This document shows, piece by piece, positions 643-60,268 of a DNA stretch of 64,000 nucleotides. The first letter of the stretch is position 1. Each line of letters opens with the position of its first letter. The notes beneath the pieces were generated by a model. It was given only the letters and a program-made list of their open reading frames with translations, was not told the DNA's origin and ran no database searches. The translations under genes were made by a program, and so were the position numbers. The stretch spans positions 186,001-250,000 of the IMG/VR virus record IMGVR_UViG_3300045970_000794; one strand, 5' to 3'.

Positions 643-724
643 AATATATTGTATTACTTTATAATAAATATACGAATATTTAAAAAATTAGTTGCATTCA
701 GATATTTATTTAAAAAATAAAATT

Positions 725-1894
725 ATGGCTGCAAGTGAAATTGAGAAAACACGCTTATTTAGACAAGTTAGACATCAACTAGGTGCTCCAATGCGTAAAA
801 TTGAGTTACCAGACGAAAATTTAGTAACTTTATTGGAATTATCTATTGAAGATTACGCTGAATATGTACATAATTGGCTAATAGATAGTCAATGGTCATC
901 ATTTATAGGTCAACCTATTGATACTTTAGATATGGCATTCGCATTAACAACTAGAACATTAGATTTTGAGACACAATTTACTTATGCTTACTCAAAACAA
1001 GTTGGTTTACAAGCTAGAGGTCCATGGGAACTCAAAAAAGATTATGTTGAGATAGAAGCTGGTAGACAAGTTTATGAAATTCCAGCTGGTCGTGAGGTAA
1101 ATCAAGTATTATGGTTAACCCCATCGGTAACTAATCGTGCATTATTTGCTAATTTTGGTGGTTTTGATAACGGTATTGGTGGTGGTTACGCTCAAACTGG
1201 TTTTGGAGTCGGTGGTGGTGGTACTGGTGCTGGTTCTGGTGGTATGGGTGGAAGAGGTGGATATTATATCGCACCAGCATTTGATGTTTTATTGACTGCG
1301 GCCGATATGAATCTTAAACATAGATTATTAAGAAGTGATTTAGTATATAAAATAACCGCTGGGCCTAATGGTACTAAGTTATTACATTTAATTAGCACAC
1401 CAGGTTCTAAAATGACATTCGGTATGGGTGGTCAAGGTGGAAGTATGGCTGGTTCTAGTTCTTTAGGTATTGCTGGATGTCACGTATGGTATCATTATTA
1501 CGATACTAATGGTGATGTTGATGCATGTAGAGCGGCTAATTTAGATATTATTACGATGCCGAATGAAGTACCATTAACTAGATTAGATTTTGATGTGTTA
1601 AATGAACCTACAAAAATATTAATTCGTCAAATATTAACAGCTAGAGCTAAAATAACCTTAGGAAGAACTAGGGGTAAGTTTGGTGGTGTTGTTGGTCCAC
1701 CAGAAGCTGAAAGAACTATGGATTGGGAAAGTTTATTAACTGAAGGTAATGAAGAATATGGTAAAATATTTGAAAGATTAGCTGCTAGGTTAGAGCAAAT
1801 GACTAATACTAAAATGTTAGAGCGAAAAGCTAATGAAGCTGAAAACTTAAATAAAACATTAGCTTATAGACCCTTAGGATTTTACGTTATTTAG
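725..1894 (+). CDS. Neck/head-completion protein (T4 gp13-like)
   Basis: RHQLGAPMRKIELPDE N-terminus and GRTRGKFGGV C-terminal motif typical of gp13-like neck proteins. ATG 725 preferred to TTG 692 because it follows the ATATTTAT motif at 702. Confidence 0.7.
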   Translation: MAASEIEKTRLFRQVRHQLGAPMRKIELPDENLVTLLELSIEDYAEYVHNWLIDSQWSSFIGQPIDTLDMAFALTTRTLDFETQFTYAYSKQVGLQARGPWELKKDYVEIEAGRQVYEIPAGREVNQVLWLTPSVTNRALFANFGGFDNGIGGGYAQTGFGVGGGGTGAGSGGMGGRGGYYIAPAFDVLLTAADMNLKHRLLRSDLVYKITAGPNGTKLLHLISTPGSKMTFGMGGQGGSMAGSSSLGIAGCHVWYHYYDTNGDVDACRAANLDIITMPNEVPLTRLDFDVLNEPTKILIRQILTARAKITLGRTRGKFGGVVGPPEAERTMDWESLLTEGNEEYGKIFERLAARLEQMTNTKMLERKANEAENLNKTLAYRPLGFYVI

Positions 1895-2791
1895 TAATTT
1901 TTTTTCTAATTTTTTAATTATATCTTCATTATACCTAATAATAATTAAAGGGATGCTATTAATATAACAGTATCTCTTTTTTATTTTATCTCTTTTTCTA
2001 ATTGATTTTAGATTATCTAATCCACCCCAATATTTAATTGACCTATAATGTTGTTCACCATTATATTCGATACAAACATTATAATCTGGTAAATAAAAAT
2101 CAAATGGTAACATTATTTTATCTTTACAACCATTAAATCTATGCTGTGGTAAATATTTAATATTATTTATTAATAAAAATTCTCTAATAATTTTTTCACC
2201 CTTTGATGATTTACACTTAGAACACCCTTGACCTTTTAAATGATTACTAGGGGTTTGCTCAAATTCACCATGAATTGAACATATAATTTTAACTTTATTA
2301 TGTGCATTAATATAAATTACATTAGAATAATCATATTTATTTGTGTGAATTTCTAAAGATTTAGTTATGAATTTATCATTTTTAAACCTTTTACTATCAC
2401 CAACTGCTTTCCAACCACATTTTTGACAACCATAACTCTCCAAATGCCATTTAGCTTTTTGTTTAAATTCACCATGTATTGGGCATATTATATCTAAAAC
2501 ACTATGTTTATTTATATAATTAATGTTAGTATAATCGTATTTATTACCATGTTTTTGTTTTGCTTTAATTATAAATTCTTCATTAGTTAATTTTGAGTTT
2601 ATTTTACATTTTGGACATCCACTATTACTTCTTAGATGATTTCTTGGTTCCATTAAAAACTCACCATGTATTGGACATATTATGATTATGTTTTCGTATT
2701 GTGTTATATAATTAGCTTTTGAATAATCATATTTATCACCATGTTTTTGTACTGCTCGTTTAATAAAAATTTCTGTAGTTATCATATTCAT
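1874..2791 (-). CDS. Free-standing endonuclease: three Zn-finger-like repeats (YDYS..IICPIHGEF..GCxKC) plus C-terminal PD-(D/E)xK-like (Vsr/DUF559-type) domain
   Basis: Repeats visible in translation; C-terminal LPFDFYLPDYNVCIEYNGEQHY...RDKIKKRYC...IPLIIIRY. Confidence 0.8.
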   Translation of the reverse strand: MNMITTEIFIKRAVQKHGDKYDYSKANYITQYENIIIICPIHGEFLMEPRNHLRSNSGCPKCKINSKLTNEEFIIKAKQKHGNKYDYTNINYINKHSVLDIICPIHGEFKQKAKWHLESYGCQKCGWKAVGDSKRFKNDKFITKSLEIHTNKYDYSNVIYINAHNKVKIICSIHGEFEQTPSNHLKGQGCSKCKSSKGEKIIREFLLINNIKYLPQHRFNGCKDKIMLPFDFYLPDYNVCIEYNGEQHYRSIKYWGGLDNLKSIRKRDKIKKRYCYINSIPLIIIRYNEDIIKKLEKKLLNNVKS

Positions 2792-2831
2792 TTTATTATA
2801 AATATATTGAAATTAATAAAAGAAATTTTAA

Positions 2832-2870
2832 ACTATGAAATATCGTCCTATGGGATTCTATGTAATATAA
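2832..2870 (+). repeat. Orphan second copy of the neck gene 3' end
   Basis: Reads TMKYRPMGFYVI* versus TLAYRPLGFYVI* at 1856..1894; followed directly by a terminator. Confidence 0.85.
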
Positions 2871-2902: not shown

Positions 2903-5900
2903 CTAGAAATTCCATTCATCATCGTCTTCGTTAAGAGTTATCTCAGCAACTTCTTGTATTGCTTCGACAATGACCTTTTCCTCTTCGTTAATGGACTGAT
3001 TTGGTTCTACTGATAGTACTGATTCATTTAATACTTTTTGTTGTTCTAAATGTTTTAACCAAAAGTCATAAGGTTTTTTAAGTTCATCATCATTAAGAGT
3101 CTCGTAAAATTCAGCTCTAGTTATGGCTTCATCCTCGTATTTAAATATATCATCTAGCTTACCGATTTCCTCATCGTATTTTTTAGATAGGAATATTAAT
3201 TCACCTTCTTCGTTAACACTTAAATACGCTATATTTACGTAGTTATTAATAACATCTATCGCAACATCATAATCAGAAGCTAATAATTCATTAATATTTT
3301 CTAATTGGTTAGCTTCAAGTCGTTTAATTAAATCATCAATTTTTTTACGTTCGAAAATAAGGTCACCTTCTTTCATTTTAGCTACTCTATCTAAATAGTC
3401 AGCTTTAATTCCTTCCCAATCTTCTAGCGAAACACCAATATCTTCTAGGTTATTTGGTGTTTTATTTACTTTAAGCCAAAATTTAATTTCTTTATCTTCG
3501 AAATTCATTAAATCTTTTTCGTAGTCATCTTGGTCGATTGGTTCATCTGGAATACCAGATACAAGTATACATTCTTCTTCGGTGAATATTTGAGGCTCCG
3601 CTAATGTCATTTTTTTAGTCTTCCTATCGGTTTTAGTTTCAACAAAAATCTTATCACGAATTTCTTTTTTGAATACAACCAATAATGGGGTTATTCGATT
3701 ATTAAATGCTGTTAAATACTTAGCCACATTATATTCTTCTGTGGTTAAATTGGAATCACTTTCAATATCCTCAGTTGGAATCAATTTACAATTTAATTTA
3801 ACGACACCTTTTTCAGTTTTAATATCACCATGTGATTTTTTTTCACCAGTATTAACATAGTAGATTACATCACCTAATTCAACTTTTAAATTATGTAAAA
3901 TTGCTAATTCCATATGTGCTTGCTTAGGCATTGGTTTACCAGCTTTATTAGTTTTTTTACATTTTTTCTTGTATTCATCAATACTAATCTTAACTTTAGA
4001 TTTTGATGCAATTTTAATTAAAGGAATTGAATAACTATAAATCATATCGACATATTTTTGATATAACTCAATAAATTCACTACCTTTATTATCCAATAAT
4101 AATACAATTGCTTCATCTAAAAATTCTTCAATGTATGTTGGCATTTTCTTAGATTTGATAGTATTACCAACCAATTTAATCTTAGTTTTACCTTTTTTGA
4201 TGATTTTATTAGCGTAATTCTTTCTAGCGAAATTAATAGTTGATTCACCGATTTCATCAATATCCAATCCCATTCTACCAATCATGTAAGTATCATTGAA
4301 TTCAGCAACTACAGCTTTTACACCGATATATTCTTTATCTTTTTCATTGAATGAATGTTTTCCATTTGAAATATACGTTATATTATCAATATCCAGTGGT
4401 ATTTCAAAGTTAAAACCATCGGTATTTTTAAGATTAATTAATCCAATTCCACCAATAAAAGTCCCATCATCAGTTGATATGTCATAAACAAAATTATTAA
4501 TATCTTTATTAGAAATTATTTCATTTTTCCAAACTTCATCAGACTTTTTTAATGTTTTTTTAGTAAAACTAGATAAATTACGATTATTATTTTTTAATGA
4601 AAATGAAATAAAATTTTGTTTATCTTTTCTGGTTTTAATTTTATACTCAATATTTAAATTTTTCATTAATAAACCAATACCAGCCATAGCAACTTGAGAC
4701 TTCATACCAATATCTGAACAAGTATCTATAGTATTTCCATAACCATCAGATGCACACACACCTTCTAAAAAATATTTTTTAATATCATTATTAGAATTTA
4801 AAATAATATTAGGTATTTTTTTCTCCCTGTAAGAAGTGTAAAAGTTTTCACAGAAAAATGTTGCGAATGTTGCATTGTGAACAACTAAATTATAGACACT
4901 ACTAGATTTTAAGTGGTTTTTTATTTCAGATTTAATTTTAAATTTAGTTTCTAAAATTAATTTTAATTTCTCCAAAAATTCTAAATTTGAATTGGATATC
5001 TTCCAGTCACTTCGTTTACCTTTATTAATATGTATTTCACCAGTTTTTTTGGACCTATATTTTTGCGTTCTTTTTGAACAATTAGCTGAACCATCACCCA
5101 AGAAAAAACCATATAACCAAGCCTCATCACTTGATATGCTATTTATTGAGTTAAAATCATTTAAATCATTACAAACATCAATCTTATCACCTCTTTTTAA
5201 TTTTGATGGTTTTATTTGAATATTATTCTGAAACAATGAATGGTCTTCAGTTACATTAACTAACCTATCTTTAGTGGTTATTCGGTGAATTGTTTTTTCA
5301 GTTTCATGTCTAAAAACATATTTAATATTTTTCCAACCATTTACAGTTAAAACTTCATATGGTTTAGCTTCAAAATCACGTAATTTATGAGAATCAATAT
5401 AGTTTGAATTTTCATTAAATAAATCACAAATTGGTAATATATCTAACATTCCATTTTTATATCTAATATAAACTGGTGTATCATATGTAACTGAATCACC
5501 CACAAGTGGTATAAAACCATATTTTTCAACAAAGAACTTAACCATAAGTCTTAAATACATTCTACCTCTACATGTTGTTTCTTCAGCCAAATCCATTTGT
5601 GACCATGGGAATACATCTGGCGCACCATAAGAACCGAAGAATGAGTTAGCAAGTATTTTAAGTGGTAATTGTTTTCTATCATAGAAACTACCAGTCTTCG
5701 TATCACCAAGACCATAAGCTTCATTCATCAAAGCTTTGTATTTATCACGATAATCAACAATATAGGTTAATAAACCTTTCATAACACCACTGATATCAAT
5801 ATCAGAGAATATATTCCAAGTTAATTGAGTTTTTGGGTAAAGAGCTGCATAATCGAGTTTTGAATATTTACCAGCTTTACCAACTCTAAGTAATCTTGAT

Positions 5901-7267
5901 AAACCACCAGTAAAATCACGTTTCTTATCAAATTCTGGAATAGCCAAATCATTTTCATATGACCAAGCTAACATTATCAACTTCCAAATGGTTGCAGTAC
6001 CCATGGTAAGGGTACGCATAAATGATGTTGGTAAAATTTTAGATAATAAGAATGATGCTTGATTAAAAATGAAACCTACTTGTTCGGTTTCCCATAAATC
6101 ATCTAAAAGATATCGTTCAGCAATATATTGCCCTGTAACAATTTCATATTCATCTTTAAGTGGTTTATTTTCAGTTATTTTATACCAATCACCATTGACA
6201 TCATTAAATGCATACTCATTTACTTTATCGGACCAAATAGTACCAATCATTCTACCATCATTAATATAAACACGATTTGGTTTATTAATTTCGGAAAATT
6301 TAGTAATATATTTTAATCCAGCTTTTTTAATATCAGAATTAATCGCTTGAGCTCTACGAACTGAATGATAAATGTCGGCAATGTTATATCCCCACATGTA
6401 TGTTTGTTCATAATATTCAGTATCACTACCTAATTTTAATGTTGATTGTTTACGTTTAATTTTAACATTAGGGTTTAATGTTTTTACCATTTTAGTAATA
6501 TCAACATTTAATAATCTACATCTTTCAAAGATATAGTACCAGTCAAATGTTTCTGAATTATAACCTTCAATAATATCTGGCTTTAATGCATCAATAATAC
6601 CAAAAAATGTTTCTAATGCTTGAACTTCTCTACTTAATCTATTTGGACCATCTTCAATTGTTAATATTGTCTCCCACCCACGATTATTTTTAATACCTAT
6701 TTGATTAATATGTGTATTATGTGGGTCTAAACCAGTTGTTTCTAAGTCGAACTGAAGTCTATGCAAATCATTATAATCATCAAATCCCTTGAATAATCGT
6801 TTACCAGATTGAATCATATATTGCTCAATTGGTGGTAATGTCATGAAATTCTTATTACCATTTATCTCACAACCAGCATCTTTAAAGAAATTTAATAATT
6901 GAAGGTAATTTTTGCTTCCAGTGATAAGGTATTTATATCCAGCGGCTAATCGTTGTGGTTCAGTACCTTCATCATTTTTAGTTTTAAGTAATTTAACTTT
7001 AATTTCAGCTTTACGCATTTCATTCTTCAACTTACCTCTATTTCCACCGTATAAATCATCCAATGCGGCTTCTTTCATCCAAAGGAATGGCTTATACTTT
7101 TCTTTTTTGACTATTTTAGTTGAAGTACCATAACCATTTGGTTGGTTAATTATTACTGAAACAGTTTCATCGTAATAATTAGCTTCAATTGCTGTAATGT
7201 ATTTTTGTGGGTCGTGACCATCGAAAAATTGTTCAATAGCCTCAGGTGTAACTTGTTTTTGCTCCAT
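2903..7267 (-). CDS. polB: Family B DNA polymerase containing an intein
   Basis: ExoI FDLETTG, ExoII GYNSETFDW, motif A DYAALYP, motif B KILANSFFG, motif C VGD|TDG split by intein, RKNYA. Likely start MEQKQ at 7267 (ORF track starts 7306). Confidence 0.95.
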   Translation of the reverse strand: MEQKQVTPEAIEQFFDGHDPQKYITAIEANYYDETVSVIINQPNGYGTSTKIVKKEKYKPFLWMKEAALDDLYGGNRGKLKNEMRKAEIKVKLLKTKNDEGTEPQRLAAGYKYLITGSKNYLQLLNFFKDAGCEINGNKNFMTLPPIEQYMIQSGKRLFKGFDDYNDLHRLQFDLETTGLDPHNTHINQIGIKNNRGWETILTIEDGPNRLSREVQALETFFGIIDALKPDIIEGYNSETFDWYYIFERCRLLNVDITKMVKTLNPNVKIKRKQSTLKLGSDTEYYEQTYMWGYNIADIYHSVRRAQAINSDIKKAGLKYITKFSEINKPNRVYINDGRMIGTIWSDKVNEYAFNDVNGDWYKITENKPLKDEYEIVTGQYIAERYLLDDLWETEQVGFIFNQASFLLSKILPTSFMRTLTMGTATIWKLIMLAWSYENDLAIPEFDKKRDFTGGLSRLLRVGKAGKYSKLDYAALYPKTQLTWNIFSDIDISGVMKGLLTYIVDYRDKYKALMNEAYGLGDTKTGSFYDRKQLPLKILANSFFGSYGAPDVFPWSQMDLAEETTCRGRMYLRLMVKFFVEKYGFIPLVGDSVTYDTPVYIRYKNGMLDILPICDLFNENSNYIDSHKLRDFEAKPYEVLTVNGWKNIKYVFRHETEKTIHRITTKDRLVNVTEDHSLFQNNIQIKPSKLKRGDKIDVCNDLNDFNSINSISSDEAWLYGFFLGDGSANCSKRTQKYRSKKTGEIHINKGKRSDWKISNSNLEFLEKLKLILETKFKIKSEIKNHLKSSSVYNLVVHNATFATFFCENFYTSYREKKIPNIILNSNNDIKKYFLEGVCASDGYGNTIDTCSDIGMKSQVAMAGIGLLMKNLNIEYKIKTRKDKQNFISFSLKNNNRNLSSFTKKTLKKSDEVWKNEIISNKDINNFVYDISTDDGTFIGGIGLINLKNTDGFNFEIPLDIDNITYISNGKHSFNEKDKEYIGVKAVVAEFNDTYMIGRMGLDIDEIGESTINFARKNYANKIIKKGKTKIKLVGNTIKSKKMPTYIEEFLDEAIVLLLDNKGSEFIELYQKYVDMIYSYSIPLIKIASKSKVKISIDEYKKKCKKTNKAGKPMPKQAHMELAILHNLKVELGDVIYYVNTGEKKSHGDIKTEKGVVKLNCKLIPTEDIESDSNLTTEEYNVAKYLTAFNNRITPLLVVFKKEIRDKIFVETKTDRKTKKMTLAEPQIFTEEECILVSGIPDEPIDQDDYEKDLMNFEDKEIKFWLKVNKTPNNLEDIGVSLEDWEGIKADYLDRVAKMKEGDLIFERKKIDDLIKRLEANQLENINELLASDYDVAIDVINNYVNIAYLSVNEEGELIFLSKKYDEEIGKLDDIFKYEDEAITRAEFYETLNDDELKKPYDFWLKHLEQQKVLNESVLSVEPNQSINEEEKVIVEAIQEVAEITLNEDDDEWNF
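4424..5494 (-). mobile_element. Intein (357 aa) with LAGLIDADG homing endonuclease in polymerase motif C
   Basis: Starts SVTYDTPVY after VGD; block B VTEDHSL; WLYGFFLGDGS and FLEGVCASDGY; ends VYDIST...INLKN before T(+1)DG. Confidence 0.92.
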
Positions 7268-7346
7268 ATGTATATAAAAAAATTCAGAAATAATGTAGAA
7301 ATACAAAATAACTTAATTTTTTCGTAAAAAGCAATAAAAAACGTAA

Positions 7347-7385
7347 TTATTTTATACTACCATCTAAAACATGTAATTTTAATGT
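7347..7385 (-). repeat. Orphan second copy of the 3' end of the BppU-like gene (8757..9152)
   Basis: Reads TLKLHVLDGSIK* versus TLTIHVLDADIKNR* at 8757..8801; 8 of 12 residues identical. Confidence 0.7.
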
Positions 7386-7422
7386 TAAAAACTTTATCTT
7401 TTTTATAAATTAGTTATATTTA

Positions 7423-7451
7423 TATTTGTGGGAACATTGTTCCCACAAATA
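7423..7451. promoter_or_regulatory. Perfect 14-bp inverted repeat, candidate operator
   Basis: TATTTGTGGGAACA-T-TGTTCCCACAAATA; overlaps ATATTTAT (7416) and TATATTTG (7421); ends 21 nt before ATG 7473. Confidence 0.65.
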
Positions 7452-7472
7452 ACATTAATTAACTTATATGCC

Positions 7473-8045
7473 ATGAGAGAAGAAGAAATTAAAATTAGAA
7501 TATCATCGGACATTAAAACGGATTTTCAAAATATATGTGAAATTGAAAATACAACGATGTCTAATAAATTAACTGGATTTATTATTGATGAAATACATCG
7601 CAAAATAATTAAAACATTGGATAATAATACAATAACTAAACGTTTAATTAAATTTGGGATTAATAAAGGGGGTAGGTTCTATCAAAAGAATGAATTACTT
7701 AAAATTATATTGGATGAAGATGGTTTTGAAATATCTCATCTAGATTTTTTAAATAAAAAGACGTTATATGGTCAATTTGGTTTCCATTCTGAGGGTGATG
7801 TAATACATAAATATAATGCAACTCACTCTATCAAAAATCTTAGAATTGATGGTGATTGGTTAATTGGTGATATTACCATTTTGAATCCATCTATACTACC
7901 AGTATTGGATAATTTAGTTTTTAGACCTCGTTCATTTGGTATTATTAGTGAAAACGGTATTGTTAAAGATTTGGAGATAATCGGTTTTGATGCTATACTT
8001 AAAACAGATGATAAATTTATTGATTATGGTGATGAAGATATGTAG
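7473..8045 (+). CDS. RHH-like N-terminus fused to a degenerate prohead-protease (gp21-like) domain
   Basis: N-terminal EIKIRISSDIKTDFQNICE..TMSNKL; INKGGRFY, LYGQFGFH, ATHSIKNLRIDGDWLIGDITI, FRPRSFG and LEIIGFDAI align by eye with the protease at 59567..60268. Confidence 0.65.
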   Translation: MREEEIKIRISSDIKTDFQNICEIENTTMSNKLTGFIIDEIHRKIIKTLDNNTITKRLIKFGINKGGRFYQKNELLKIILDEDGFEISHLDFLNKKTLYGQFGFHSEGDVIHKYNATHSIKNLRIDGDWLIGDITILNPSILPVLDNLVFRPRSFGIISENGIVKDLEIIGFDAILKTDDKFIDYGDEDM

Positions 8046-8760
8046 TAAATGTCAATTACCTAAAGAATTGACTGAATTTAATAAACGAAGTAATTCTAAG
8101 GATGGTTTACGTTATGAATGTAAGTCATGTCAAAAATTAATTTATGAACAAAAAAGAGAATATTACATTATTAAAATGAAAAATAATCGTATTAAACACA
8201 TTGATGAATATGCTAAACGAGATAGAGAATATTATGAAACTAATCGAAATGGTATATTATATCAGAAAAAAGAATATTATAAAGAAAATAGAAATGAAAT
8301 ATTAATAAAGAAAAAAGAATATGATAAAGAAAATAGTGAACATAAAAAAGAATATAATAAAAATTATCGTAAAAATAATAAACCTAAACTAATGAAGTAT
8401 GCTAGGGATTACTCAAAAGAATGGCGTAAAACACATTCACATATTGTAGCTTGGAGGCGTGTACTATCATGCTCATTAAAAAGATTAAATAAATCAAAAG
8501 AAGGTCATACCATTGATTTACTAGGATATTCACCACACCAATTAAAAGAGCATTTAGAATCACTATTTACTGATGGTATGTCATGGGATAATTATGGTGA
8601 ATGGCATATTGACCATAAAATACCAGTTTGTAGCTTTTCAGCTGATACACCACCTAGTGTTGTAAATGCATTAAGTAATTTACAACCATTATGGGCTACC
8701 ACAAGGGAAATAAATGGGATTATTTACGAAGGTAATTTAAATAAATGGAAATATGATTAA
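7987..8760 (+). CDS. HNH homing endonuclease with N-terminal CxxC..CxxC finger; true start probably near 8026-8032
   Basis: KICSKC..ECKSC; GMSWDNYGEWHIDHKIP...NLQPLW..NLNK; paralog of 55292..55975. Confidence 0.85.
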   Translation: MMLYLKQMINLLIMVMKICSKCQLPKELTEFNKRSNSKDGLRYECKSCQKLIYEQKREYYIIKMKNNRIKHIDEYAKRDREYYETNRNGILYQKKEYYKENRNEILIKKKEYDKENSEHKKEYNKNYRKNNKPKLMKYARDYSKEWRKTHSHIVAWRRVLSCSLKRLNKSKEGHTIDLLGYSPHQLKEHLESLFTDGMSWDNYGEWHIDHKIPVCSFSADTPPSVVNALSNLQPLWATTREINGIIYEGNLNKWKYD

Positions 8761-9152
8761 CGATTTTTAATATCCGCATCCAAGACATGGATTGTTAAAG
8801 TATCTCTAATTGGTACTATCAGTGTTCCGATTACTTCCATATCATTTAATCCACCTAAAAATTCAATAGTGAATTGTCCACGATATGTTCCAGCTCTATT
8901 AGTATCTTTAGTTCTAAATGTATAGGTTACATAATATTCTTCAGTCATATCCAATGGAGTATCTAGTTTTAACTCACACCCAGCTGGTCGTTTTGCAACC
9001 TTAATTAAACCAGTATCAACATCAACCATACTGAAGTAAACGTTGGAGTTTTGTATTTGCTCGTGAAATGCTTTATAGTCATTTCTACCATCTTGAATTA
9101 ATTCCATCTTCAAAATATTTAATGTAGCACCTTTATTTATGAAAAAATCCAT
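8757..9152 (-). CDS. BppU-like baseplate/Ig-like virion protein
   Basis: MDFFINKGATLNILKMEL...YTFRTKDTNRAGTYRGQFTIEF..TLIVP pattern; end of the tail-fibre operon. Confidence 0.5.
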   Translation of the reverse strand: MDFFINKGATLNILKMELIQDGRNDYKAFHEQIQNSNVYFSMVDVDTGLIKVAKRPAGCELKLDTPLDMTEEYYVTYTFRTKDTNRAGTYRGQFTIEFLGGLNDMEVIGTLIVPIRDTLTIHVLDADIKNR

Positions 9153-9861
9153 ATAATTCACTGATTTTAATTTTATTATTTATTCTTTCAGTTACATTAA
9201 TTAATAACATTTGTGGTGAAAATAATGAGCTAGAACCTTTAGAAAGATTTTCAAAACTCGGAATCGCCCTTAAATTAATAATATCAGCAACTATTTTAAC
9301 ATCTAAATTAACCATAAAACAATCTTTTATTGATACTATATGGTCTATATGGTAATCATTCAGACCTTTACCTACTTTATCTAAATTTTCAATTTGTGTA
9401 GAGCATTGTTTTATAGTTTTTTTAGTATAATATTTAACCCTACTCTTATATTTATAAAATTCTGATTTAGTTTTTAAATATTCATCATATTCAATACCAT
9501 ATTTAGTTTTAAACATTTTAACCATTGATTTATTTCTATCAATATATTTATGGTCTCGTTTAATTATTGGTAAATTTTTTAATTTTATTATTTTATTTAA
9601 AGTATCATATTTAATACCACACTCAATTGCAATTGTTTTTAATGTTTTAGTTTTATCATAATAAATAGATAATACTTTTGAAATAATTCCTTCATTTAAA
9701 TATTTTATATTAACCCCACCACGTTTTTTTCTATTACATTTCATACATAATGTATTTTTATTCGTGGTAGATTTATAACTATCTTTTCGTGTGTAAGTTA
9801 TATTTTCACCACACCCGTCAGTTGGGCATTTACGTTCGAATATTTTATTATCAGTTGTCAT
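9133..9861 (-). CDS. HNH homing endonuclease
   Basis: N-terminal CPTDGC..CMKC; C-terminal YHIDHIVS...NLRAIPSFENLSKG. Confidence 0.8.
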   Translation of the reverse strand: MTTDNKIFERKCPTDGCGENITYTRKDSYKSTTNKNTLCMKCNRKKRGGVNIKYLNEGIISKVLSIYYDKTKTLKTIAIECGIKYDTLNKIIKLKNLPIIKRDHKYIDRNKSMVKMFKTKYGIEYDEYLKTKSEFYKYKSRVKYYTKKTIKQCSTQIENLDKVGKGLNDYHIDHIVSIKDCFMVNLDVKIVADIINLRAIPSFENLSKGSSSLFSPQMLLINVTERINNKIKISELYGFFHK

Positions 9862-53892: not shown

Positions 53893-53961
53893 TTATCTCA
53901 ATTCATTGATGTTGAATGTAGGAACACCATCTACTCTTACATGCCCGTAAAACCTGTTGTT
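53893..53961 (-). repeat. Orphan, synonymously recoded copy of the major capsid gene 3' end
   Basis: Encodes NNRFYGHVRVDGVPTFNINELR*, identical to 56072..56140; 11 of 69 nt differ, all silent. Confidence 0.95.
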
Positions 53962-53964
53962 AAA

Positions 53965-53996
53965 TTTGCATTTTTAAAATAATTTTAGTATCTTTG
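53965..53996 (+). promoter_or_regulatory. Bacteroidota-type promoter of the Zn-finger nuclease gene
   Basis: TTTG-N20-TATCTTTG, 5 nt before ATG 54002. Confidence 0.75.
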
Positions 53997-54001
53997 TATT
54001 T

Positions 54002-55318
54002 ATGAAAAAATTAACAAATGAAGCGTTTTTTAAAGGAATAGAAAAAGAACATGGGGATAAATATGATTATTCTAAACTTGAGTATATAAATATGAGTACT
54101 AAAGTAACTATCATATGTCCAATACATGGCGAATTTAAGCAAAGACCACATAATCATGTAGAAGGTAAAGGGTGTCCTAAATGTGGATTTGATAGAACAA
54201 GAAATAGTAAAGTTAAAACAACTAATAAATTTATTGCACAAGCCAATGAAATTCACAATAATAAATATGATTATTCTAAAACCAATTATACAACTGGTAT
54301 TATAAAAGTAATTATTATATGTCCAATACACGGTGAATTTAAACAAGACCCATATAACCACCTACAAGGTAAGGGGTGCCCTAAATGTGGTAAAGTTTAT
54401 AAACCAACAACAGAAGAGTTCATTCAAAAAGTTAGGGGAGTTCATGGAGATAAATATGATTATTCTTTATTTAAATATGTTACCAGTTCAACAGCAAGTG
54501 AAATAATATGTCCAATACATGGAAAATTTAAACAAACACCACAAAACCACCTTAAAGGGAAAGGCTGTTTTAAATGTGGTAAAGCTTATGCTAGTAGGTA
54601 AAGAAGATATAAATTAGATGATGTTATTATTAAATTAAAAAATAAAGGGTTTTATGATGAATCATATAAATATGAAGAAATTTTATTTATAGATGGTGGG
54701 TCGAAAATGTTAATTACTAATAAATATACTAATACAAAACATATTACACCAGTACACAATATATTAAGACGAAAAACTAATTGTTGTTTTGATAATGCTA
54801 TTAATAAACAAGAATACCTTATTAGTATGAGTAATATTGTTCATGATAATAAATATAATTATTCTAAAGTTAATTATAAATCAGCTATATTTAAAATTAT
54901 AATTACATGTCCTACGCATGGTGATTTTAAACAAACTTTTAATTCACATTTAAGAGGTTCTGGGTGTCCTAGATGTTCTGATAGTAAAGGTGAGAAAAAA
55001 ATAAGAAAATTACTAAAGAGTAATGATATTATATTTATCCATCAATATAAATTTAATAATTGTAAGAATGTAAGACCTTTACCTTTTGATTTTTATTTAC
55101 CAGATTATAACGTGTGTATTGAATATAATGGAAAACAACATTATGAACCGATTAAACATTTTGGTGGTAAAAAACAATTAATTTATATACAAAAAAATGA
55201 TAAAATTAAACAAGAATTTTGTGAAAAAGAAGGTATTAAATTAATCACTGTAAAATATAATGAAGATATTGAAGAACGATTAACCGAAGAGTTAAAGAAT
55301 TTGAGTTCCTTTACTTAA
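54002..55318 (+). pseudogene. Zn-finger-repeat PD-(D/E)xK-like endonuclease interrupted by one in-frame TAA
   Basis: ORFs 54002..54601 and 54707..55318 are in one frame; only TAA 54599-54601 interrupts. C-terminus PFDFYLPDYNVCIEYNG matches 1874..2791. Confidence 0.8.
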
Positions 55319-55975
55319 ATTGTCCTCACCCCATAATGGTTGAAGATTATCCAAACGCCAACACTCCTTAAACTCTAGGTCATCAGTACTTTCAAACATA
55401 AAACTATTCATCGGTTTTTTATGGTCTACATGCCACTCACCATAATTATCCCACGTCATTCCATCGGTAAATAAGTTCTCTAAATGAATCATCAATTCTT
55501 CGATACTATAACCTAATAATGCAAATGTTTTATTCGTCTTATTAACATTACGTTCTTTAAGCATTTGCCATACCGCTGTGCGTGTTCTAACACCTAAACG
55601 ATACTTTGGGTCCTCAGCACGTCTTTTACGCTCATAATCACGCTTATATTTGTTTACATGTTCTTTATTTTCATCTCTCCAACTTGAGTGATACTTTCGC
55701 AATTCTTTTCTATTTTCGTTAGACCATTCTTTATGGTATTCGCTAAGGTCTTCTTTATTTTTTTCATAATAACGTTTAGCGGCAGCTGGTTTCCCACCTA
55801 TAAATCGTTTACCAGAAGGTCCAAACACAACACCGTTTTCTTTAAGTGTTCTAATTATTATCGTTTTATGTATACCCATTCGTTCACTAATAGTCGTAGA
55901 CCCAAGTAATTTATCATTATACATTTTCAAACACTCTTGTGTTTGCTCTGGTGTTAATTCTATTTTTTTACTCAT
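55292..55975 (-). CDS. HNH homing endonuclease with N-terminal HTH
   Basis: GMTWDNYGEWHVDHKKP..NLQPLWGEDNLSKG; own TATCTTTG promoter at 55979-55986 (minus). Confidence 0.85.
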   Translation of the reverse strand: MSKKIELTPEQTQECLKMYNDKLLGSTTISERMGIHKTIIIRTLKENGVVFGPSGKRFIGGKPAAAKRYYEKNKEDLSEYHKEWSNENRKELRKYHSSWRDENKEHVNKYKRDYERKRRAEDPKYRLGVRTRTAVWQMLKERNVNKTNKTFALLGYSIEELMIHLENLFTDGMTWDNYGEWHVDHKKPMNSFMFESTDDLEFKECWRLDNLQPLWGEDNLSKGTQIL

Positions 55976-56022
55976 ATACAAAGATACTAATAATAGTTTA
56001 TAAAGTCAAGTAATATTAACAA

Positions 56023-56048
56023 AAAAGGTGGAGATAAATCCACCTTTT
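56023..56048 (-). terminator. Terminator of the major capsid gene
   Basis: aaaaGGTGGA-gataaa-TCCACCtttt. Confidence 0.75.
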
Positions 56049-56071
56049 AAGTTTTATATTATCAAGAGTGA

Positions 56072-57859
56072 TTATCTCAACTCATTAATATTGAATGTAG
56101 GTACACCATCAACTCTTACGTGACCATAGAAACGGTTGTTCACAACTTTCTTAGCGTAACGTGTCATTATACCCTTAACAGGGGCAAAGTTGAATGGGTT
56201 GTACATTGTTGGAGTAAGTTGCAAAGGCACGTATGGTGCGTAGATGTAACCAGTATCCAATAATGATTTACCTTTATGACCGATAATCATTGAGTAGTAA
56301 GGAGCATAAGGGTCACGATACACTTGGTAACGTCCACTTAATGAACCAATTCTTTCAATACCCATGTTGTATTGGTCTTGTTCTGGACTTGCGTCAGAAA
56401 CGTGGAAATATTCTAAATCGTCAAATATAGCACTGATTTCAGAAGATACAACGATGAAGTTAGCACCACCTCTAAGTGTAGATTTATGGATTTGTGCTGA
56501 AATTTGGTTAACTTTAGTTAATAAAGTTTGATTCCAGTCTTTTTGAGTGTAAGGACTTGCAGCTGTAGAAGCTTTTCTCCAACCTTGGTAATCCCATCTC
56601 ATTTGCCATGCAGCAGCTTTACGTAAATCACGAAGGATTTCACGGTCAATTTCAGCAGCTACTTGTTCAGACAACATAGCAGTCAATTCAGCTTCAGCAT
56701 CGATGTTGTGGAATGCACTAACGTCTTGAGCCAATTCTGGTGACCATGTTGCACGTAATTTTCTTTCTTCAACAGATACAACAACTTCGTCAAGTTTGAA
56801 AGAAATTTCAGCAAGTTCAGTTTCTAATTCAAGAGTTGCATAAGTTGCATATGATACTGTAAATGCAGTTGCACCAGTTGCAGCATAAGTACTAGAACTT
56901 ACAGCTCCAACATAACCATCATATGTAGATGTACCGTTAGATGATACTGGGTGACTTAAATCAAGGTCTAAATACATAATACCTTCAGCGTCACAAATAT
57001 CAGTATATTCAACAATACCTTTACCGTATTTTTGAGTTACAATTCTAAATGGAACTTCAGCATTTTGTGCAATGATTACTTTACCATCTGGGTCAGTAAT
57101 TGCAGCGTTTGCACTAACAATTTTAAGACCAGCTAAGAAGCTTTCAGTATCCATTGGATGTCCATCAGGTCCGTTTAATCTACCAGCACCACTACCAGTG
57201 AAACCAGTTACTTTAAGGATTACGTTTCTGATTGAACCATCAACTGCGTAAGTTGGGGTTGTTGCATTAGCCCAAACACCATTAGCATTTAATGTAACAG
57301 GTTGAGTCAATGTCATTGCATTGATAGTTATTGTACCTTTTGAGTTGTCAAATAAACCATCATTGTAATATAAATCGTAAAGTGATTTACTTCTGAAAGT
57401 TGTTTCTAAACAACCATCAATAACACAACTTGGAAGTTGTCCAACAGCCATACCAGTGTGAGCTGAATATGTTGCACCGTCAATCCATGGGTCACCATAA
57501 GTTCCAGTTGAATTATTTGTTCTGTAAGAAGTTTGTGGTACGAAGAAGAACAATTTACCAATTGGCATGTTCAACGCTTGTACAGACACGATATCGTTAG
57601 CTAAAAGCTTAGAGAATACTCTTCTTACGATAGGGAATACTACTGTTTCGAAAGAACCAGAAGAATCCGCTGTAGTGTTTTCGGTTAATAAAGTACTAGC
57701 TTGGTTTTCATAAAGCTGAGCAATATTTTCCTTAACGTGGCCTTTAAGACCTTCTAAGAATCCAAGAGATTCCCATTTTTCTTGAGTCATTTTACGGATA
57801 ACTTTCATGTGGTTTAATCCAATGTTACCTACTTGACCTGATGTTAATAAATGTCCCAT
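56072..57859 (-). CDS. Major capsid protein (T4 gp23-like)
   Basis: PIVRRVF..VSVQ..P.GKLF; RKLRATWSPELAQD..DAEAEL..EIDREI; YAPYVPL..GIMTRY. Confidence 0.97.
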   Translation of the reverse strand: MGHLLTSGQVGNIGLNHMKVIRKMTQEKWESLGFLEGLKGHVKENIAQLYENQASTLLTENTTADSSGSFETVVFPIVRRVFSKLLANDIVSVQALNMPIGKLFFFVPQTSYRTNNSTGTYGDPWIDGATYSAHTGMAVGQLPSCVIDGCLETTFRSKSLYDLYYNDGLFDNSKGTITINAMTLTQPVTLNANGVWANATTPTYAVDGSIRNVILKVTGFTGSGAGRLNGPDGHPMDTESFLAGLKIVSANAAITDPDGKVIIAQNAEVPFRIVTQKYGKGIVEYTDICDAEGIMYLDLDLSHPVSSNGTSTYDGYVGAVSSSTYAATGATAFTVSYATYATLELETELAEISFKLDEVVVSVEERKLRATWSPELAQDVSAFHNIDAEAELTAMLSEQVAAEIDREILRDLRKAAAWQMRWDYQGWRKASTAASPYTQKDWNQTLLTKVNQISAQIHKSTLRGGANFIVVSSEISAIFDDLEYFHVSDASPEQDQYNMGIERIGSLSGRYQVYRDPYAPYYSMIIGHKGKSLLDTGYIYAPYVPLQLTPTMYNPFNFAPVKGIMTRYAKKVVNNRFYGHVRVDGVPTFNINELR

Positions 57860-59566: not shown

Positions 59567-60268
59567 TTACAATAAAAATTTATCTAAAAAATCATTTAAA
59601 TTTTCATTTATTATTTTACTACCATTAATTTTTGATTCCATGAATGGTGATGCTTTTTCTCTATTTCTGAATATCCAAGAACCTGGTGTACTAGGACTAG
59701 TAACAATATCCCAACAAATTATTTCAAAATCATCTTGTACGATAAATCTACCATTAACTTCTTCCAATGAACCAACACCTCTTGATGAAACACCAATCAT
59801 AATACCTTTTCTTAGTAAATTAGCAACCATATCACCTTGACATGAAATAATACCAAAATTGATAAATCCTGGTGACATAATAATTTCCATTTCACCTACC
59901 AAGGTATTACCTTCCCACCACATTTTGGTTATATTGTGTGCGATGCGTTCAACTGAAATAATAGAAGATTCTGGATGGTCTGATTCACCAATAGCTCTAA
60001 CGTCTCTGATTAGCTCTTGATAATTATTTGCTTCACGTTTTAATATTTGTTCGGAATAAATTCGTCCATTACGGTTTTCAATACCATATTTTTGTAATAC
60101 AACGAATACTTTTAATGGTTCTTCAATTACGAATTGTCTGGATTCTAGTTTCTGAATTTCAGTTATGAATTTTTTGTTTCGAGAATCCCTAGGGTCAATA
60201 TACCCATCATTCTCGATTAAATATCCATAACCAGATTCACCAGCTTTTAATATTTTAATATCTGACAT
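59567..60268 (-). CDS. Prohead core protease (T4 gp21-like)
   Basis: NRNGRIY, GESDHP, GVSSRGVGS, DIVTSPS. Confidence 0.93.
   Translation of the reverse strand: MSDIKILKAGESGYGYLIENDGYIDPRDSRNKKFITEIQKLESRQFVIEEPLKVFVVLQKYGIENRNGRIYSEQILKREANNYQELIRDVRAIGESDHPESSIISVERIAHNITKMWWEGNTLVGEMEIIMSPGFINFGIISCQGDMVANLLRKGIMIGVSSRGVGSLEEVNGRFIVQDDFEIICWDIVTSPSTPGSWIFRNREKASPFMESKINGSKIINENLNDFLDKFLL

What the first reader, a model, noticed from the sequence alone, without database searches (positions are those of the whole stretch)
7347..8801. BppU-like locus: two-gene cassette between duplicated ends
The orphan TLKLHVLDGSIK* and the active TLTIHVLDADIKNR* bracket an inverted repeat, the RHH-protease fusion and an HNH gene. 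The HNH stop overlaps the target stop (TTAA, 8757-8760). This would mean the cassettes can carry cargo and regulation. It is the weakest of the three duplications (8 of 12 aa).
Basis: partly seen in the sequence, partly recalled or inferred. Interest (0 to 1): 0.65.

Follow-up and report, generated by a model that had tools for sequence, protein, structure and literature searches.

The report
Homing cassette that replaces a gene's end
A mobile two-gene cassette (a DNA-binding regulator plus an HNH nuclease) has landed inside the last dozen codons of a small jumbo-phage gene, supplies that gene with a substitute ending, and leaves the original ending behind as a dead fragment. This way for a selfish nuclease gene to invade a coding region harmlessly was previously described in yeast and fungal mitochondria.

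Summary
The 131-aa gene (8757-9152, minus strand) ends TLTIHVLDADIKNR*. An orphan TLKLHVLDGSIK* lies at 7347-7385, 79 nt before the DNA polymerase B start.

- **Family match:** about 190 homologues typically end ...HVLDGSIKK*. The orphan scores 21.5 bits against a profile of their tails, second in the 362-kb genome only to the live end. About 0.01 such hits are expected per genome.
- **Empty alleles:** in 70 of 83 related loci the polymerase starts 49-212 nt after the homologue's stop. None of the 83 has a second tail.
- **The insert:** a conserved leader with a 29-bp palindrome, a 190-aa protein with an RHH domain and a T4 gp21-like fold, and an overlapping 242-aa HNH gene whose stop shares TTAA with the target's stop.
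- **Mobility:** in about 30 related contigs the same module abuts the 3' end of an SNF2 helicase gene. Five of these keep an orphan SNF2 end. This genome's SNF2 site is empty.
- **Recurrence:** at least four more nuclease genes in this genome are bracketed by duplicated gene ends, including the major capsid gene (22 codons, 10 synonymous and 0 nonsynonymous differences).

Best reading: a homing element that replaces the 3' end of its target, like yeast WHO elements and fungal mitochondrial mORFs. I rate it a new variant of a known kind. Cleavage and repression are inferred, not shown.

The parts
7347..7385 (-). Orphan (displaced, native) 3' end of the 131-aa gene: TLKLHVLDGSIK plus stop. Robust homology covers 7347-7373 (HVLDGSIK*). 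The first three or four codons may overlap the cassette's left edge.
   Evidence: 21.5 bits, P 1.5e-8 per position. It aligns with the 3' ends of relatives. It lies 79 nt from the polB ATG, against 49-212 nt in 70 relatives.
7383..7472 (+). Conserved leader of the cassette. It holds a TGT(A/T)AA block, a T-run, an ATATTTAT box (7416-7423) and a 29-bp perfect palindrome (7423-7451; core TGTGGGAACAtTGTTCCCACA). I read the palindrome as the operator and promoter region of the RHH gene.
   Evidence: palindrome; the same box and dyad lie upstream of homologues at both insertion sites, with symmetric changes in L012 and L107. No terminator-like site. No Rfam family apart from a chance hairpin hit.
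7473..8045 (+). 190-aa protein ('p190'): N-terminal ribbon-helix-helix domain plus a C-terminal domain with the fold of T4 prohead protease gp21. It is probably not catalytic.
   Evidence: 49 homologues, 55-68% identical. AF2 pLDDT 78. Foldseek 5jbl E 1e-3. hhalign against the phage's own gp21 E 3.6e-5. No Pfam hit.
8032..8760 (+). 242-aa HNH (His-Me finger) endonuclease with an N-terminal zinc ribbon and a basic repeat region. It overlaps the upstream gene by 14 nt. Its stop shares TTAA with the target gene's stop.
   Evidence: phrog_1035 E 7e-22. Invariant WH.DH...N...N.L.P.W. 11 family matches in this genome against 1-2 in relatives.
8757..8801 (-). Substitute (imported) 3' end of the target gene: TLTIHVLDADIKNR plus stop. 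It is in frame with the gene body and is two codons longer than the orphan, so that its stop meets the HNH stop.
   Evidence: It scores 23.1 bits against the family tail profile. It diverges from the closest relative (P0002) exactly from this point on.
8757..9152 (-). Target gene: a 131-aa beta-sandwich protein conserved next to polB in this clade of jumbo phages. It shows weak baseplate (BppU N-domain-like) fold matches.
   Evidence: 193 homologues. Alignment A2. AF2 pLDDT 82. Foldseek E about 1e-2.
2903..7267 (-). DNA polymerase B gene (context). In empty alleles it directly follows the target gene.
   Evidence: Pfam DNA_pol_B_exo1. Synteny.

Best explanation
The stretch from about 7386 to 8801 is a homing-endonuclease cassette that sits inside the 3' end of a conserved 131-aa phage gene. 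It supplies that gene with a replacement ending.

**The unit, read on the minus strand**
1. A substitute gene end (14 codons plus stop).
2. A convergent HNH nuclease gene.
3. Its upstream partner, an RHH/gp21-fold protein.
4. A leader with a palindromic operator.

The displaced native end (the orphan), the 79-nt spacer and polB follow.

**What is shown**
- The orphan is the ancestral end.
- Relatives have empty sites.
- The two-gene module with its leader is a conserved unit. It is found at a second target (SNF2) with the same convergent, stop-overlapping geometry, and sometimes with an orphan there too.
- The same architecture recurs around other nuclease genes in this genome.

**What is inferred**
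- During co-infection, the HNH cuts the cassette-free allele in or near the conserved ...GTLIVPIR/ELFIHVLDGSIKK coding stretch.
- The break is repaired from the cassette-bearing genome. The gene body serves as one homology arm. The orphan, spacer and polB serve as the other.
- The imported end keeps the gene functional and is presumably not cleavable. This is the logic of WHO elements at yeast FBA1 and of fungal mitochondrial mORFs.
- The RHH protein most likely represses the operon by binding the palindrome next to its promoter. This would limit nuclease expression.
For: **Orphan is the ancestral end**
- The family tail consensus and profile score support this.
- The orphan ends ...GSIK* at the same position as the closest relative P0002 (85% identical; 7 of 11 residues shared). 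The live end shares 6 of 11 and has two extra residues.

**Empty alleles**
- The gene tables of P0002, P0003 and P0004 show gaps of 80, 80 and 67 nt to the next gene. In the P0004 contig that gene carries DNA polymerase B domains.
- L001-L003 show gaps of 85, 85 and 78 nt.
- 70 of 83 loci show gaps of 49-212 nt.
- There is no second tail in 626 kb of related sequence.

**The module is a mobile unit**
- p190 plus HNH, with overlapping genes, lies between Grx and SNF2 in L009-11, L013-15, L098-102, L104-108, L113-115, L118-119, L122, L124 and L126.
- The HNH stop overlaps the SNF2 stop through a shared TTATAA.
- Orphan SNF2 ends, starting at helicase motif VI, are present in L100, L105, L116, L122 and L130.
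- The SNF2 site is empty in this genome.
- p190 is absent from three complete relatives; a positive control worked.

**Leader is conserved at both sites:**

**Recurrence in this genome**
- Capsid gene: 22 codons, 10 synonymous and 0 nonsynonymous differences.
- gp13-like gene: 9 of 12 residues.
- Genes at genome positions 51988 and 105629.

**Other support**
- The occupied allele is seen in contigs of a second pond metagenome from another study.
- Published analogues: PMC7282813 (WHO elements), PMC3630166 and PMC6279837 (mitochondrial mORFs).
Against: - No cleavage, homing or repression has been measured.
- No donor carrying the DADIKNR end was found among about 190 homologues.
- No empty allele was seen in the two metagenomes that hold this phage.
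- DNA of the closest relative was not retrievable, so the junction is mapped only at protein level.
- The duplication is short (12 codons). 'Native versus imported' rests on 7 of 11 against 6 of 11 residues plus the stop position.
- p190 occurs without any HNH at both sites (L103, L121, L123, L127). The nuclease is therefore not always the resident driver.
- The HNH gene has no Pfam hit. It is identified by PHROG profiles and motif conservation only.
Confidence: 0.75

Rival explanations
1. In-situ duplication. The insertion event itself duplicated about 36 nt of this genome's own gene end (a long target-site duplication or slippage during illegitimate recombination). The live copy then diverged, perhaps under selection to escape self-cleavage. 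Nothing was imported.
For: No donor with the DADIKNR end was found. The repeat is short. 4 synonymous and 4 nonsynonymous codon differences could also arise from selection for a recoded, uncleavable site.
Against: The unselected orphan is the copy that stays consensus-like, while the selected copy is the deviant one. In the capsid duplication all 10 differences are synonymous. In L100 and L105 the two SNF2 ends belong to two allelic types that both occur as live ends elsewhere. That is what import from another lineage predicts, as shown for WHO elements and mORFs (PMC7282813, PMC3630166).
Confidence: 0.12
2. The RHH/gp21-fold gene is the element under selection: a useful accessory regulator that moves by ordinary recombination. 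The HNH is a secondary hitch-hiker that invaded the spot next to it. The orphan is a by-product of illegitimate recombination and not part of a homing mechanism.
For: p190 is more conserved (55-68%) than typical selfish nucleases. It is found without the HNH at both sites (L103, L121, L123, L127) and in another context (L012). In L123 the p190 stop itself overlaps the target stop in TTAA.
Against: HNH genes of the same family are bracketed by duplicated gene ends at three other places in this genome without any p190. A different nuclease family shows the same pattern at gp13. The common factor is a nuclease gene. Loss of the nuclease after fixation is the expected end of a homing cycle.
Confidence: 0.1
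3. The pair is a toxin-antitoxin-like or defence/counter-defence module: an RHH antitoxin or repressor followed by an overlapping nuclease toxin behind a palindromic operator. It is stationary in this genome, and its position next to a repeated gene end is incidental.
For: The gene order, the 14-nt overlap, the RHH first gene and the upstream palindrome are the classic type II layout. One homologue is named a RelBE/DinJ-type antitoxin by its source.
Against: The pair shows presence/absence polymorphism and occupies two alternative sites in syntenic genomes, each time abutting a gene's 3' end and leaving orphans. The nuclease belongs to a family with 11 matches in this genome.
Confidence: 0.03
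4. Chance resemblance, or an intron. Either the orphan is a random match in AT-rich spacer, or the insert is a self-splicing intron and the orphan is the true last exon.
For: Only 8 of 12 residues are shared between the two copies. tblastn on the whole genome gives E = 8.
Against: The family-profile probability is 1.5e-8 per position, with the correct strand, an immediate stop and the ancestral spacing to polB. There is no group I or II intron signal. The live end is itself a full family-like terminus (23.1 bits), so no splicing is needed. The inserted genes lie on the opposite strand.
Confidence: 0.01

Closest known systems
WHO elements of Torulaspora/Lachancea yeasts (Coughlan et al. 2020, eLife, PMC7282813)
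   Same: A free-standing homing nuclease gene sits between a full-length target gene, whose 3' end came with the element, and a displaced 3' fragment of the same gene. The unit is the nuclease gene plus a resistance-conferring 3' end. The fragment serves as the downstream homology arm. Repeated events build clusters; compare the capsid locus here, with three nuclease ORFs before the orphan.
   Different: This host is a jumbo phage and not a yeast nucleus. The nuclease is an HNH and not an intein-like LAGLIDADG/zinc-finger protein. The replaced piece is 12-14 codons (up to about 70 at SNF2) and not about 140. The nuclease is convergent with the target, with overlapping stops. A second gene (RHH/gp21-fold) and an operator travel with it. 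Cleavage and allele specificity are untested.
Mobile ORF elements (mORFs) of fungal mitochondria: Allomyces macrogynus atp6; Glomus atp6, atp9, cox2, nad3; Endoconidiophora cob and atp6 (PMC3630166, PMC6279837)
   Same: They have an inserted C-terminal segment, an endonuclease ORF and a native C-terminal remnant downstream. The inserted end is more divergent than the native remnant. Differences are often synonymous. Relatives have empty alleles.
   Different: Those nucleases are LAGLIDADG or GIY-YIG, usually on the same strand and often fused in frame with the host gene. No regulator gene accompanies them.
Free-standing homing endonucleases of T4-type phages (Seg, Mob; 'intronless homing'; review PMC2988022)
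   Same: These are phage-borne stand-alone nuclease genes with patchy distribution between conserved genes. They spread in co-infection by break repair with co-conversion of flanking markers. The present phage is T4-like (gp20, gp21, gp23 and gp13 homologues).
   Different: The described T4 cases sit between genes or split a gene into two working pieces (Aeh1 nrdA). The review does not mention duplicated or displaced gene ends. Here the element lies inside the coding region and brings a replacement end.
Integrating elements that restore the 3' end of their target (phages and islands in tRNA genes)
   Same: The incoming element carries a copy of the target's 3' end, so the interrupted gene stays intact, and the old end is displaced. 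This comparison rests on my own knowledge.
   Different: Those use site-specific recombinases and near-identical attachment repeats. Here there is no integrase, and the repeats are divergent coding sequence.

Membership tests
3'-end-replacing homing element (WHO-like / mORF-like) | An endonuclease gene lies between a full-length target gene and a displaced 3' fragment of the same gene. | tested here: met
   Orphan 7347-7385, HNH 8032-8760, live end 8757-8801.
3'-end-replacing homing element (WHO-like / mORF-like) | Cassette-free alleles exist in related genomes, with the gene running straight into its normal downstream neighbour. | tested here: met
   70 of 83 loci have polB 49-212 nt after the stop. 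The closest relatives P0002-P0006 are empty.
3'-end-replacing homing element (WHO-like / mORF-like) | The displaced fragment is the native end; the live end is foreign (discordant ancestry of body and end). | tested here: inconclusive
   The orphan shares the ...GSIK* stop position and 7 of 11 residues with the nearest relative, against 6 of 11 for the live end. The stretch is too short for a tree and no donor was found. The case is clearer at SNF2 (L100, L105) and in the all-synonymous capsid repeat.
3'-end-replacing homing element (WHO-like / mORF-like) | The nuclease cuts the empty allele near the junction and spares the allele with the imported end. | not testable with these tools
   This needs enzyme assays or phage crosses.
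HNH (His-Me finger) homing endonuclease | HNH catalytic motif and family profile match. | tested here: met
   phrog_1035 'endonuclease VII' E 7e-22, phrog_2255 'HNH endonuclease'. Invariant W191 H192 D194 H195 N212 N216. Caveat: no Pfam family reached E 0.05.
HNH (His-Me finger) homing endonuclease | Patchy, multi-copy distribution typical of selfish nuclease genes. | tested here: met
   11 matches in this genome against 1-2 in three complete relatives. Present or absent at the same sites.
Ribbon-helix-helix (Arc/MetJ/CopG) repressor | N-terminal strand-helix-helix DNA-binding domain. | tested here: inconclusive
   The model shows helices 12-24 and 29-48 after a short N-terminal segment of low confidence. 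Two homologues carry precomputed PF10723. A homologue hits phrog_228 'Arc-like repressor' at E 0.005. The window protein itself has no Pfam hit.
Ribbon-helix-helix (Arc/MetJ/CopG) repressor | A dyad-symmetric operator lies at its own promoter. | tested here: met
   The 29-bp palindrome lies 22 nt before the start codon. It is conserved with an ATATTTAT box in 14 of 16 loci. Binding itself was not tested.
T4 gp21 prohead protease (Peptidase S77) | Family profile match and the catalytic His/Ser pair. | tested here: not met
   There is fold similarity only (5jbl E 1e-3, TM 0.57), plus hhalign against the phage's own gp21 at Prob 71%, E 3.6e-5. There is no Pfam S77 hit and no PDB sequence hit. A His aligns, but the Ser-rich stretch of gp21 aligns with R-P in this family. 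The genuine gp21 is at 59567-60268.
Group I/II intron | Ribozyme core detectable by covariance models. | tested here: not met
   No intron family matched in 6800-9600 at E up to 1.
BppU-type baseplate protein (the target gene) | Fold or sequence match to the BppU N-terminal domain. | tested here: inconclusive
   Foldseek: NF5 baseplate 9m8o_P E 2e-3 TM 0.57; 80alpha 6v8i; TP901-1 baseplate 4v96_AA E 1e-2 TM 0.55. No Pfam or PHROG hit.

The most novel reading that the evidence does not exclude
The RHH/gp21-fold protein is more than a repressor. It may be a dedicated partner that makes this family of phage homing elements work. One possibility is that it shields the resident genome or times the nuclease, like an antitoxin. 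Another is that its prohead-protease-like domain gets it packaged into capsids, so that it acts at the very start of the next (co-)infection. If so, this would be a regulated, two-component homing system that retargets between unrelated genes (SNF2, the 131-aa gene). Together with the other end-replacing cassettes, it would show that jumbo phages routinely exchange the 3' ends of essential genes, including the capsid gene, through nuclease-driven gene-end replacement.
Probability: 0.15. Interest if true: 0.8.

Novelty: new variant of a known kind. Interest (0 to 1): 0.62.

Why it matters
- **A third invasion strategy.** Introns and inteins are the textbook ways for a homing nuclease gene to sit inside an essential gene without harm. 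This locus and its siblings in the same genome show a third way operating in phages: bring a replacement gene end and push the old one aside.
- **Chimeric gene ends.** It explains chimeric 3' ends of conserved phage genes (capsid, helicase, gp13-like, baseplate-like). These can mislead phylogenies and annotation.
- **Dated fossils.** The orphans let past homing events and their donors be traced in metagenomes.
- **A testable candidate.** The locus points to a conserved regulator/nuclease pair whose targets can be read directly from the orphans. Its specificity could be tested in vitro even though the phage is uncultured.

Tried and rejected
- **No close isolate.** DNA (megablast) and protein (tblastn) searches of the phage collection with the locus and with the 131-aa protein found nothing. 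A single-sequence scan of viral contigs also failed; the alignment-based scan worked.
- **Missing DNA.** The DNA of the closest relatives (P0002, P0003, and one contig of P0004) could not be fetched. Only their gene tables were available. The junction therefore could not be mapped at nucleotide level. L097 (74% identical) is too diverged for that.
- **Reads.** Contigs of the two pond metagenomes show only the occupied allele and no skipping joint. That is absence of evidence only, because contigs drop rare variants.
- **Site-b relatives.** I found no convincing orphan in L109, L123 and L132. A possible decayed ...HLKK* about 105 nt before polB is not significant.
- **SNF2 tails.** I expected them to be uniform next to the module. 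They are only loosely so, so I dropped that argument. What remains is the two allelic types seen in L100 and L105.
- **Complex prediction.** I make no binding claim.
- **A faulty script.** My first polB query in a script was out of frame. I redid it correctly.
- **Rejected readings.** I rejected the palindrome as a terminator, the insert as an intron, and p190 as the phage's working prohead protease, since the real gp21 is elsewhere.
Full report
**Setting.** The window is bases 186001-250000 of a single 362,102-bp virus record with direct terminal repeats and about 30% G+C. It is a T4-like jumbo phage:
- portal gp20, prohead protease gp21 and capsid gp23 homologues lie at 62075-63934, 59567-60268 and 56072-57859;
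- a gp13-like gene lies at 692-1894;
- a family B DNA polymerase with a LAGLIDADG insert lies at 2903-7267.

No close isolate exists in the phage collection. Two pond metagenomes from different studies hold the sequence.

**The observation.**
- On the minus strand, an intact 131-aa ORF (8757-9152) ends ...GTLIVPIRDTLTIHVLDADIKNR*.
- 1.4 kb further on, at 7347-7385, the same strand reads TLKLHVLDGSIK*. It is preceded by unrelated sequence containing stops.
- Between the two, on the plus strand, lie three elements:
  - a perfect 14+1+14 palindrome (7423-7451);
  - a 190-aa ORF (7473-8045);
  - a 242-aa ORF (8032-8760) that overlaps the 190-aa ORF by 14 nt.
- The stop of the 242-aa ORF shares the tetranucleotide TTAA (8757-8760) with the stop of the 131-aa gene.
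- The two ends share 8 of 12 residues and 25 of 36 nt. Four of the eight conserved residues are encoded by different codons.

**Is it more than chance?** On its own the pair is weak (tblastn E = 8 genome-wide). The family settles it.
- The 131-aa protein has 193 homologues of 123-126 aa. Their most common last eight residues are VLDGSIKK, VLEGSIKK and ILDGSIKK.
- I built a position matrix from 115 of these tails, without the window's own protein. It scores the live end at 23.1 bits, the orphan at 21.5, and the next best site in 362 kb at 17.1.
- The exact probability of 21.5 bits or more is 1.5e-8 per position. That gives 0.011 expected hits per genome and 4.6e-5 in the local 1.5 kb.
- The maxima of forty simulated genomes ranged from 6.5 to 20.8.
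- In 626 kb of 83 related loci, nothing other than each gene's own tail exceeded 10.1 bits.
- The orphan's stop lies 79 nt before the polymerase ATG (7267). In 70 of 83 related loci the polymerase starts 49-212 nt after the homologue's stop. The live stop is 1,489 nt away.

The orphan is therefore the gene's former end, still in its ancestral place.

**Empty alleles.** All of the closest relatives have the gene running straight into the next, long gene. In L001, L003 and the P0004 contig that gene carries DNA polymerase B domains.
- P0002 (85% identical), P0003 (78%) and P0004 (74%) show gaps of 80, 80 and 67 nt.
- P0006 (L003, 71%) shows 78 nt, and P0018 (L001, L002) shows 85 nt.
- P0002 shares with the window protein an unusual six-residue insert (GLNDMEV). 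It is identical up to ...GTLIVPI and then diverges. It ends ...LFIHILEGSIK* with a single K at the same position as the orphan.
- That makes the orphan the likelier native end and the live DADIKNR end the import. With 11 residues this is suggestive, not proven.
- Contigs of both metagenomes show only the occupied form. An independent 226-nt contig spans polB start, orphan, palindrome and the start of the 190-aa gene without a difference.

**What the insert encodes.**
- *The 242-aa protein.* It matches PHROG nuclease families (phrog_1035, E 7e-22). It keeps an invariant WH.DH...N...N.L.P.W motif. It has an N-terminal CxxC...CxxC ribbon and a basic 11-15-residue repeat region.
  - It has 11 matches in this genome, against one or two in three complete relatives.
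- *The 190-aa protein.* It has 49 homologues, 55-68% identical.
  - Its N-terminus is RHH-like. Two homologues carry PF10723, and one homologue hits an Arc-like PHROG weakly.
  - Its C-terminal 140 residues fold like T4 prohead protease gp21 (5jbl, E 1e-3, TM 0.57, rmsd 3.0 over 145 columns). They align with the phage's own gp21 by profile comparison (Prob 71%, E 3.6e-5).
  - It has no Pfam or PDB sequence match. Where gp21 has its serine-rich stretch, this family has R-P. I therefore take it to be a protease-derived, probably non-catalytic domain (inference).

**The pair is a mobile unit with a second target.**
- In about 30 related contigs the same two overlapping genes sit on the other side of the polymerase. 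There the order is polB, gp13-like(-), glutaredoxin(-), [190-aa gene(+), HNH(+)], SNF2 helicase(-).
- There too the HNH is convergent with the target. The two stops overlap in a shared TTATAA.
- In L100, L105, L116, L122 and L130 an orphan SNF2 3' end lies between glutaredoxin and the 190-aa gene. In the complete examples it spans 55-70 codons. It starts exactly at helicase motif VI (NEQAEDRAFRIGQ...).
- In L100 and L105 the HNH-proximal end and the orphan belong to two different allelic types of the SNF2 tail. Both types occur as live ends elsewhere.
- In the window's genome that site is empty: SNF2 (genome 183220-185076) overlaps glutaredoxin, as in cassette-free L001.
- Three complete related genomes lack the 190-aa gene altogether (positive control).
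- The gene also occurs at the polB/131-aa site in another lineage (L109, L123, L132) and in L127, there without an HNH. In L123 its own stop overlaps the target's stop in TTAA.
- It occurs without the HNH at the SNF2 site in L103 and L121.

**The leader.**
- Upstream of the 190-aa gene, 14 of 16 loci at either site carry ATATTTAT followed by a 21-23-bp dyad, TGTGGGAACAaTGTTCCCACA.
- Lineage-specific changes are symmetric in L012 (TGTTACCACAATGTGGTAACA) and L107 (TGTGGTTACAGTGTAACCACA). They are imperfect in others.
- Conservation extends leftwards to about 7383, immediately next to the orphan.
- There is no terminator-like site and no RNA family here.
- An operator for the RHH protein at its own promoter is the simplest reading. 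Binding is untested.

1. *Capsid gene.* The last 22 codons and the stop are repeated 2.2 kb downstream (53893-53961), identical in protein. They show 10 synonymous and no nonsynonymous differences. An HNH paralogue and two DUF723 nuclease-like ORFs lie between.
2. *gp13-like gene.* TLAYRPLGFYVI* is repeated as TMKYRPMGFYVI*, with a convergent 305-aa DUF723/phrog_559 nuclease gene between.
3. *This locus.*
4. *Gene at genome 51988-52485.* An HNH paralogue and an orphan follow it.
5. *Gene at genome 105629-107986.* Its orphan is fused to a decayed HNH ORF.

The common factor is a nuclease gene between a live end and a displaced end. All-synonymous divergence means both copies evolved as working gene ends before they were juxtaposed.

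**Mechanism.** The architecture is that of WHO elements at yeast FBA1. There the mobile unit is defined as the nuclease gene plus the resistance-conferring 3' end of the target. The displaced fragment supplies the downstream homology for repair (PMC7282813, section 10). It is also the architecture of fungal mitochondrial mORFs, which have an inserted C-terminus, an endonuclease ORF and a native C-terminus (PMC3630166, PMC6279837). I infer the following by analogy:
- In co-infection, the HNH cuts cassette-free alleles in or near the conserved end of the 131-aa gene.
- Repair copies [new end, HNH, 190-aa gene, leader] from the donor. The gene body is one homology arm. The orphan, spacer and polB are the other.
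- The RHH protein keeps the operon repressed.

Shown: the anatomy, the ancestry of the orphan, the empty sites, the mobility of the unit, and the recurrence. Inferred: cleavage, resistance of the new end, the direction of import, and repression.

**Novelty.** The principle is known from yeasts and fungal mitochondria.
- A full-text search found no paper combining homing endonuclease, bacteriophage and C-terminal duplication.
- The T4 mobile-DNA review does not mention duplicated ends.
- These searches cover open-access literature only.
- New here: the phage setting, the HNH nuclease, the convergent stop-overlapping geometry, the accompanying RHH/gp21-fold gene with its operator, and retargeting between two unrelated genes.

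I rate it a new variant of a known kind.

**Limits.**
- The phage is known from metagenomes only.
- The duplicated stretch is short.
- No donor of the new end was found.
- The complex prediction could not be run.

Noticed in passing
window 692-2870: The tail of the gp13-like gene (692-1894, plus strand), TLAYRPLGFYVI*, is repeated as the orphan TMKYRPMGFYVI* ending at 2870. A convergent 305-aa DUF723/phrog_559 nuclease gene (1874-2791, minus strand) overlaps the live end. This is the same architecture with a different nuclease family.
   Followed up: partly
window 53893-57859: The last 22 codons and the stop of the major capsid gene are repeated 2.2 kb downstream, with 100% protein identity and 10 synonymous, 0 nonsynonymous differences. 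An HNH paralogue (55292-55981) and two DUF723 zinc-ribbon ORFs (54002-54601, 54707-55318) lie between. It looks like a cluster built by successive insertions.
   Followed up: partly
window 2903-7267: The DNA polymerase B is 1,454 aa and carries a LAGLIDADG_3 domain at residues 729-818. Relatives are 1,095-1,262 aa. This is probably an intein with a homing endonuclease.
   Followed up: no
window 9133-9861: A 242-aa ORF with an HNH-like DYHIDH...N...N motif (phrog_5104) lies just upstream of the 131-aa gene and overlaps its start. Relatives have a sulfotransferase or a 280-aa gene there. The target gene is therefore flanked by nuclease genes on both sides.
   Followed up: partly
genome 51196-52485 and 104907-107986 (loci L006, L005): Two further genes have their C-terminal 16-19 residues repeated (68% and 81% identical) beyond an HNH paralogue. 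In the second case the orphan is fused in frame to a decayed HNH ORF.
   Followed up: partly
genome 252381-253363 (L004:2381-3363): A second RHH-plus-HNH pair lies here. The 124-aa protein has an RHH domain 48% identical to that of the 190-aa protein but a different C-terminus. An imperfect dyad, TGTTATAACGTTGTATAAACA, lies upstream.
   Followed up: partly
L076:4001-5210: In a 339-kb relative the 131-aa homologue is cut short (...PIRDTLKINIID*). It is overlapped convergently by a 286-aa ORF with a terminase-like Walker B motif and an RHH-like C-terminus. This is a different insertion at the same spot, and no orphan was detected.
   Followed up: partly
L036, L041, L046, L047, L056, L062, L070 (about 4376-5614): In about 11 relatives an ArdC-like (401-412 aa), LRR (324 aa) or unknown gene is inserted directly after the homologue's stop, before polB. 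The gene/polB boundary is a general insertion hot spot.
   Followed up: partly
window 7416-7424: The conserved ATATTTAT box of the leader reads TATAAATA on the minus strand in the window (7417-7424) and in L013. That is the T4 late-promoter consensus (from memory), and it points towards the orphan and polB. I do not know whether it drives polymerase transcription after the insertion.
   Followed up: no
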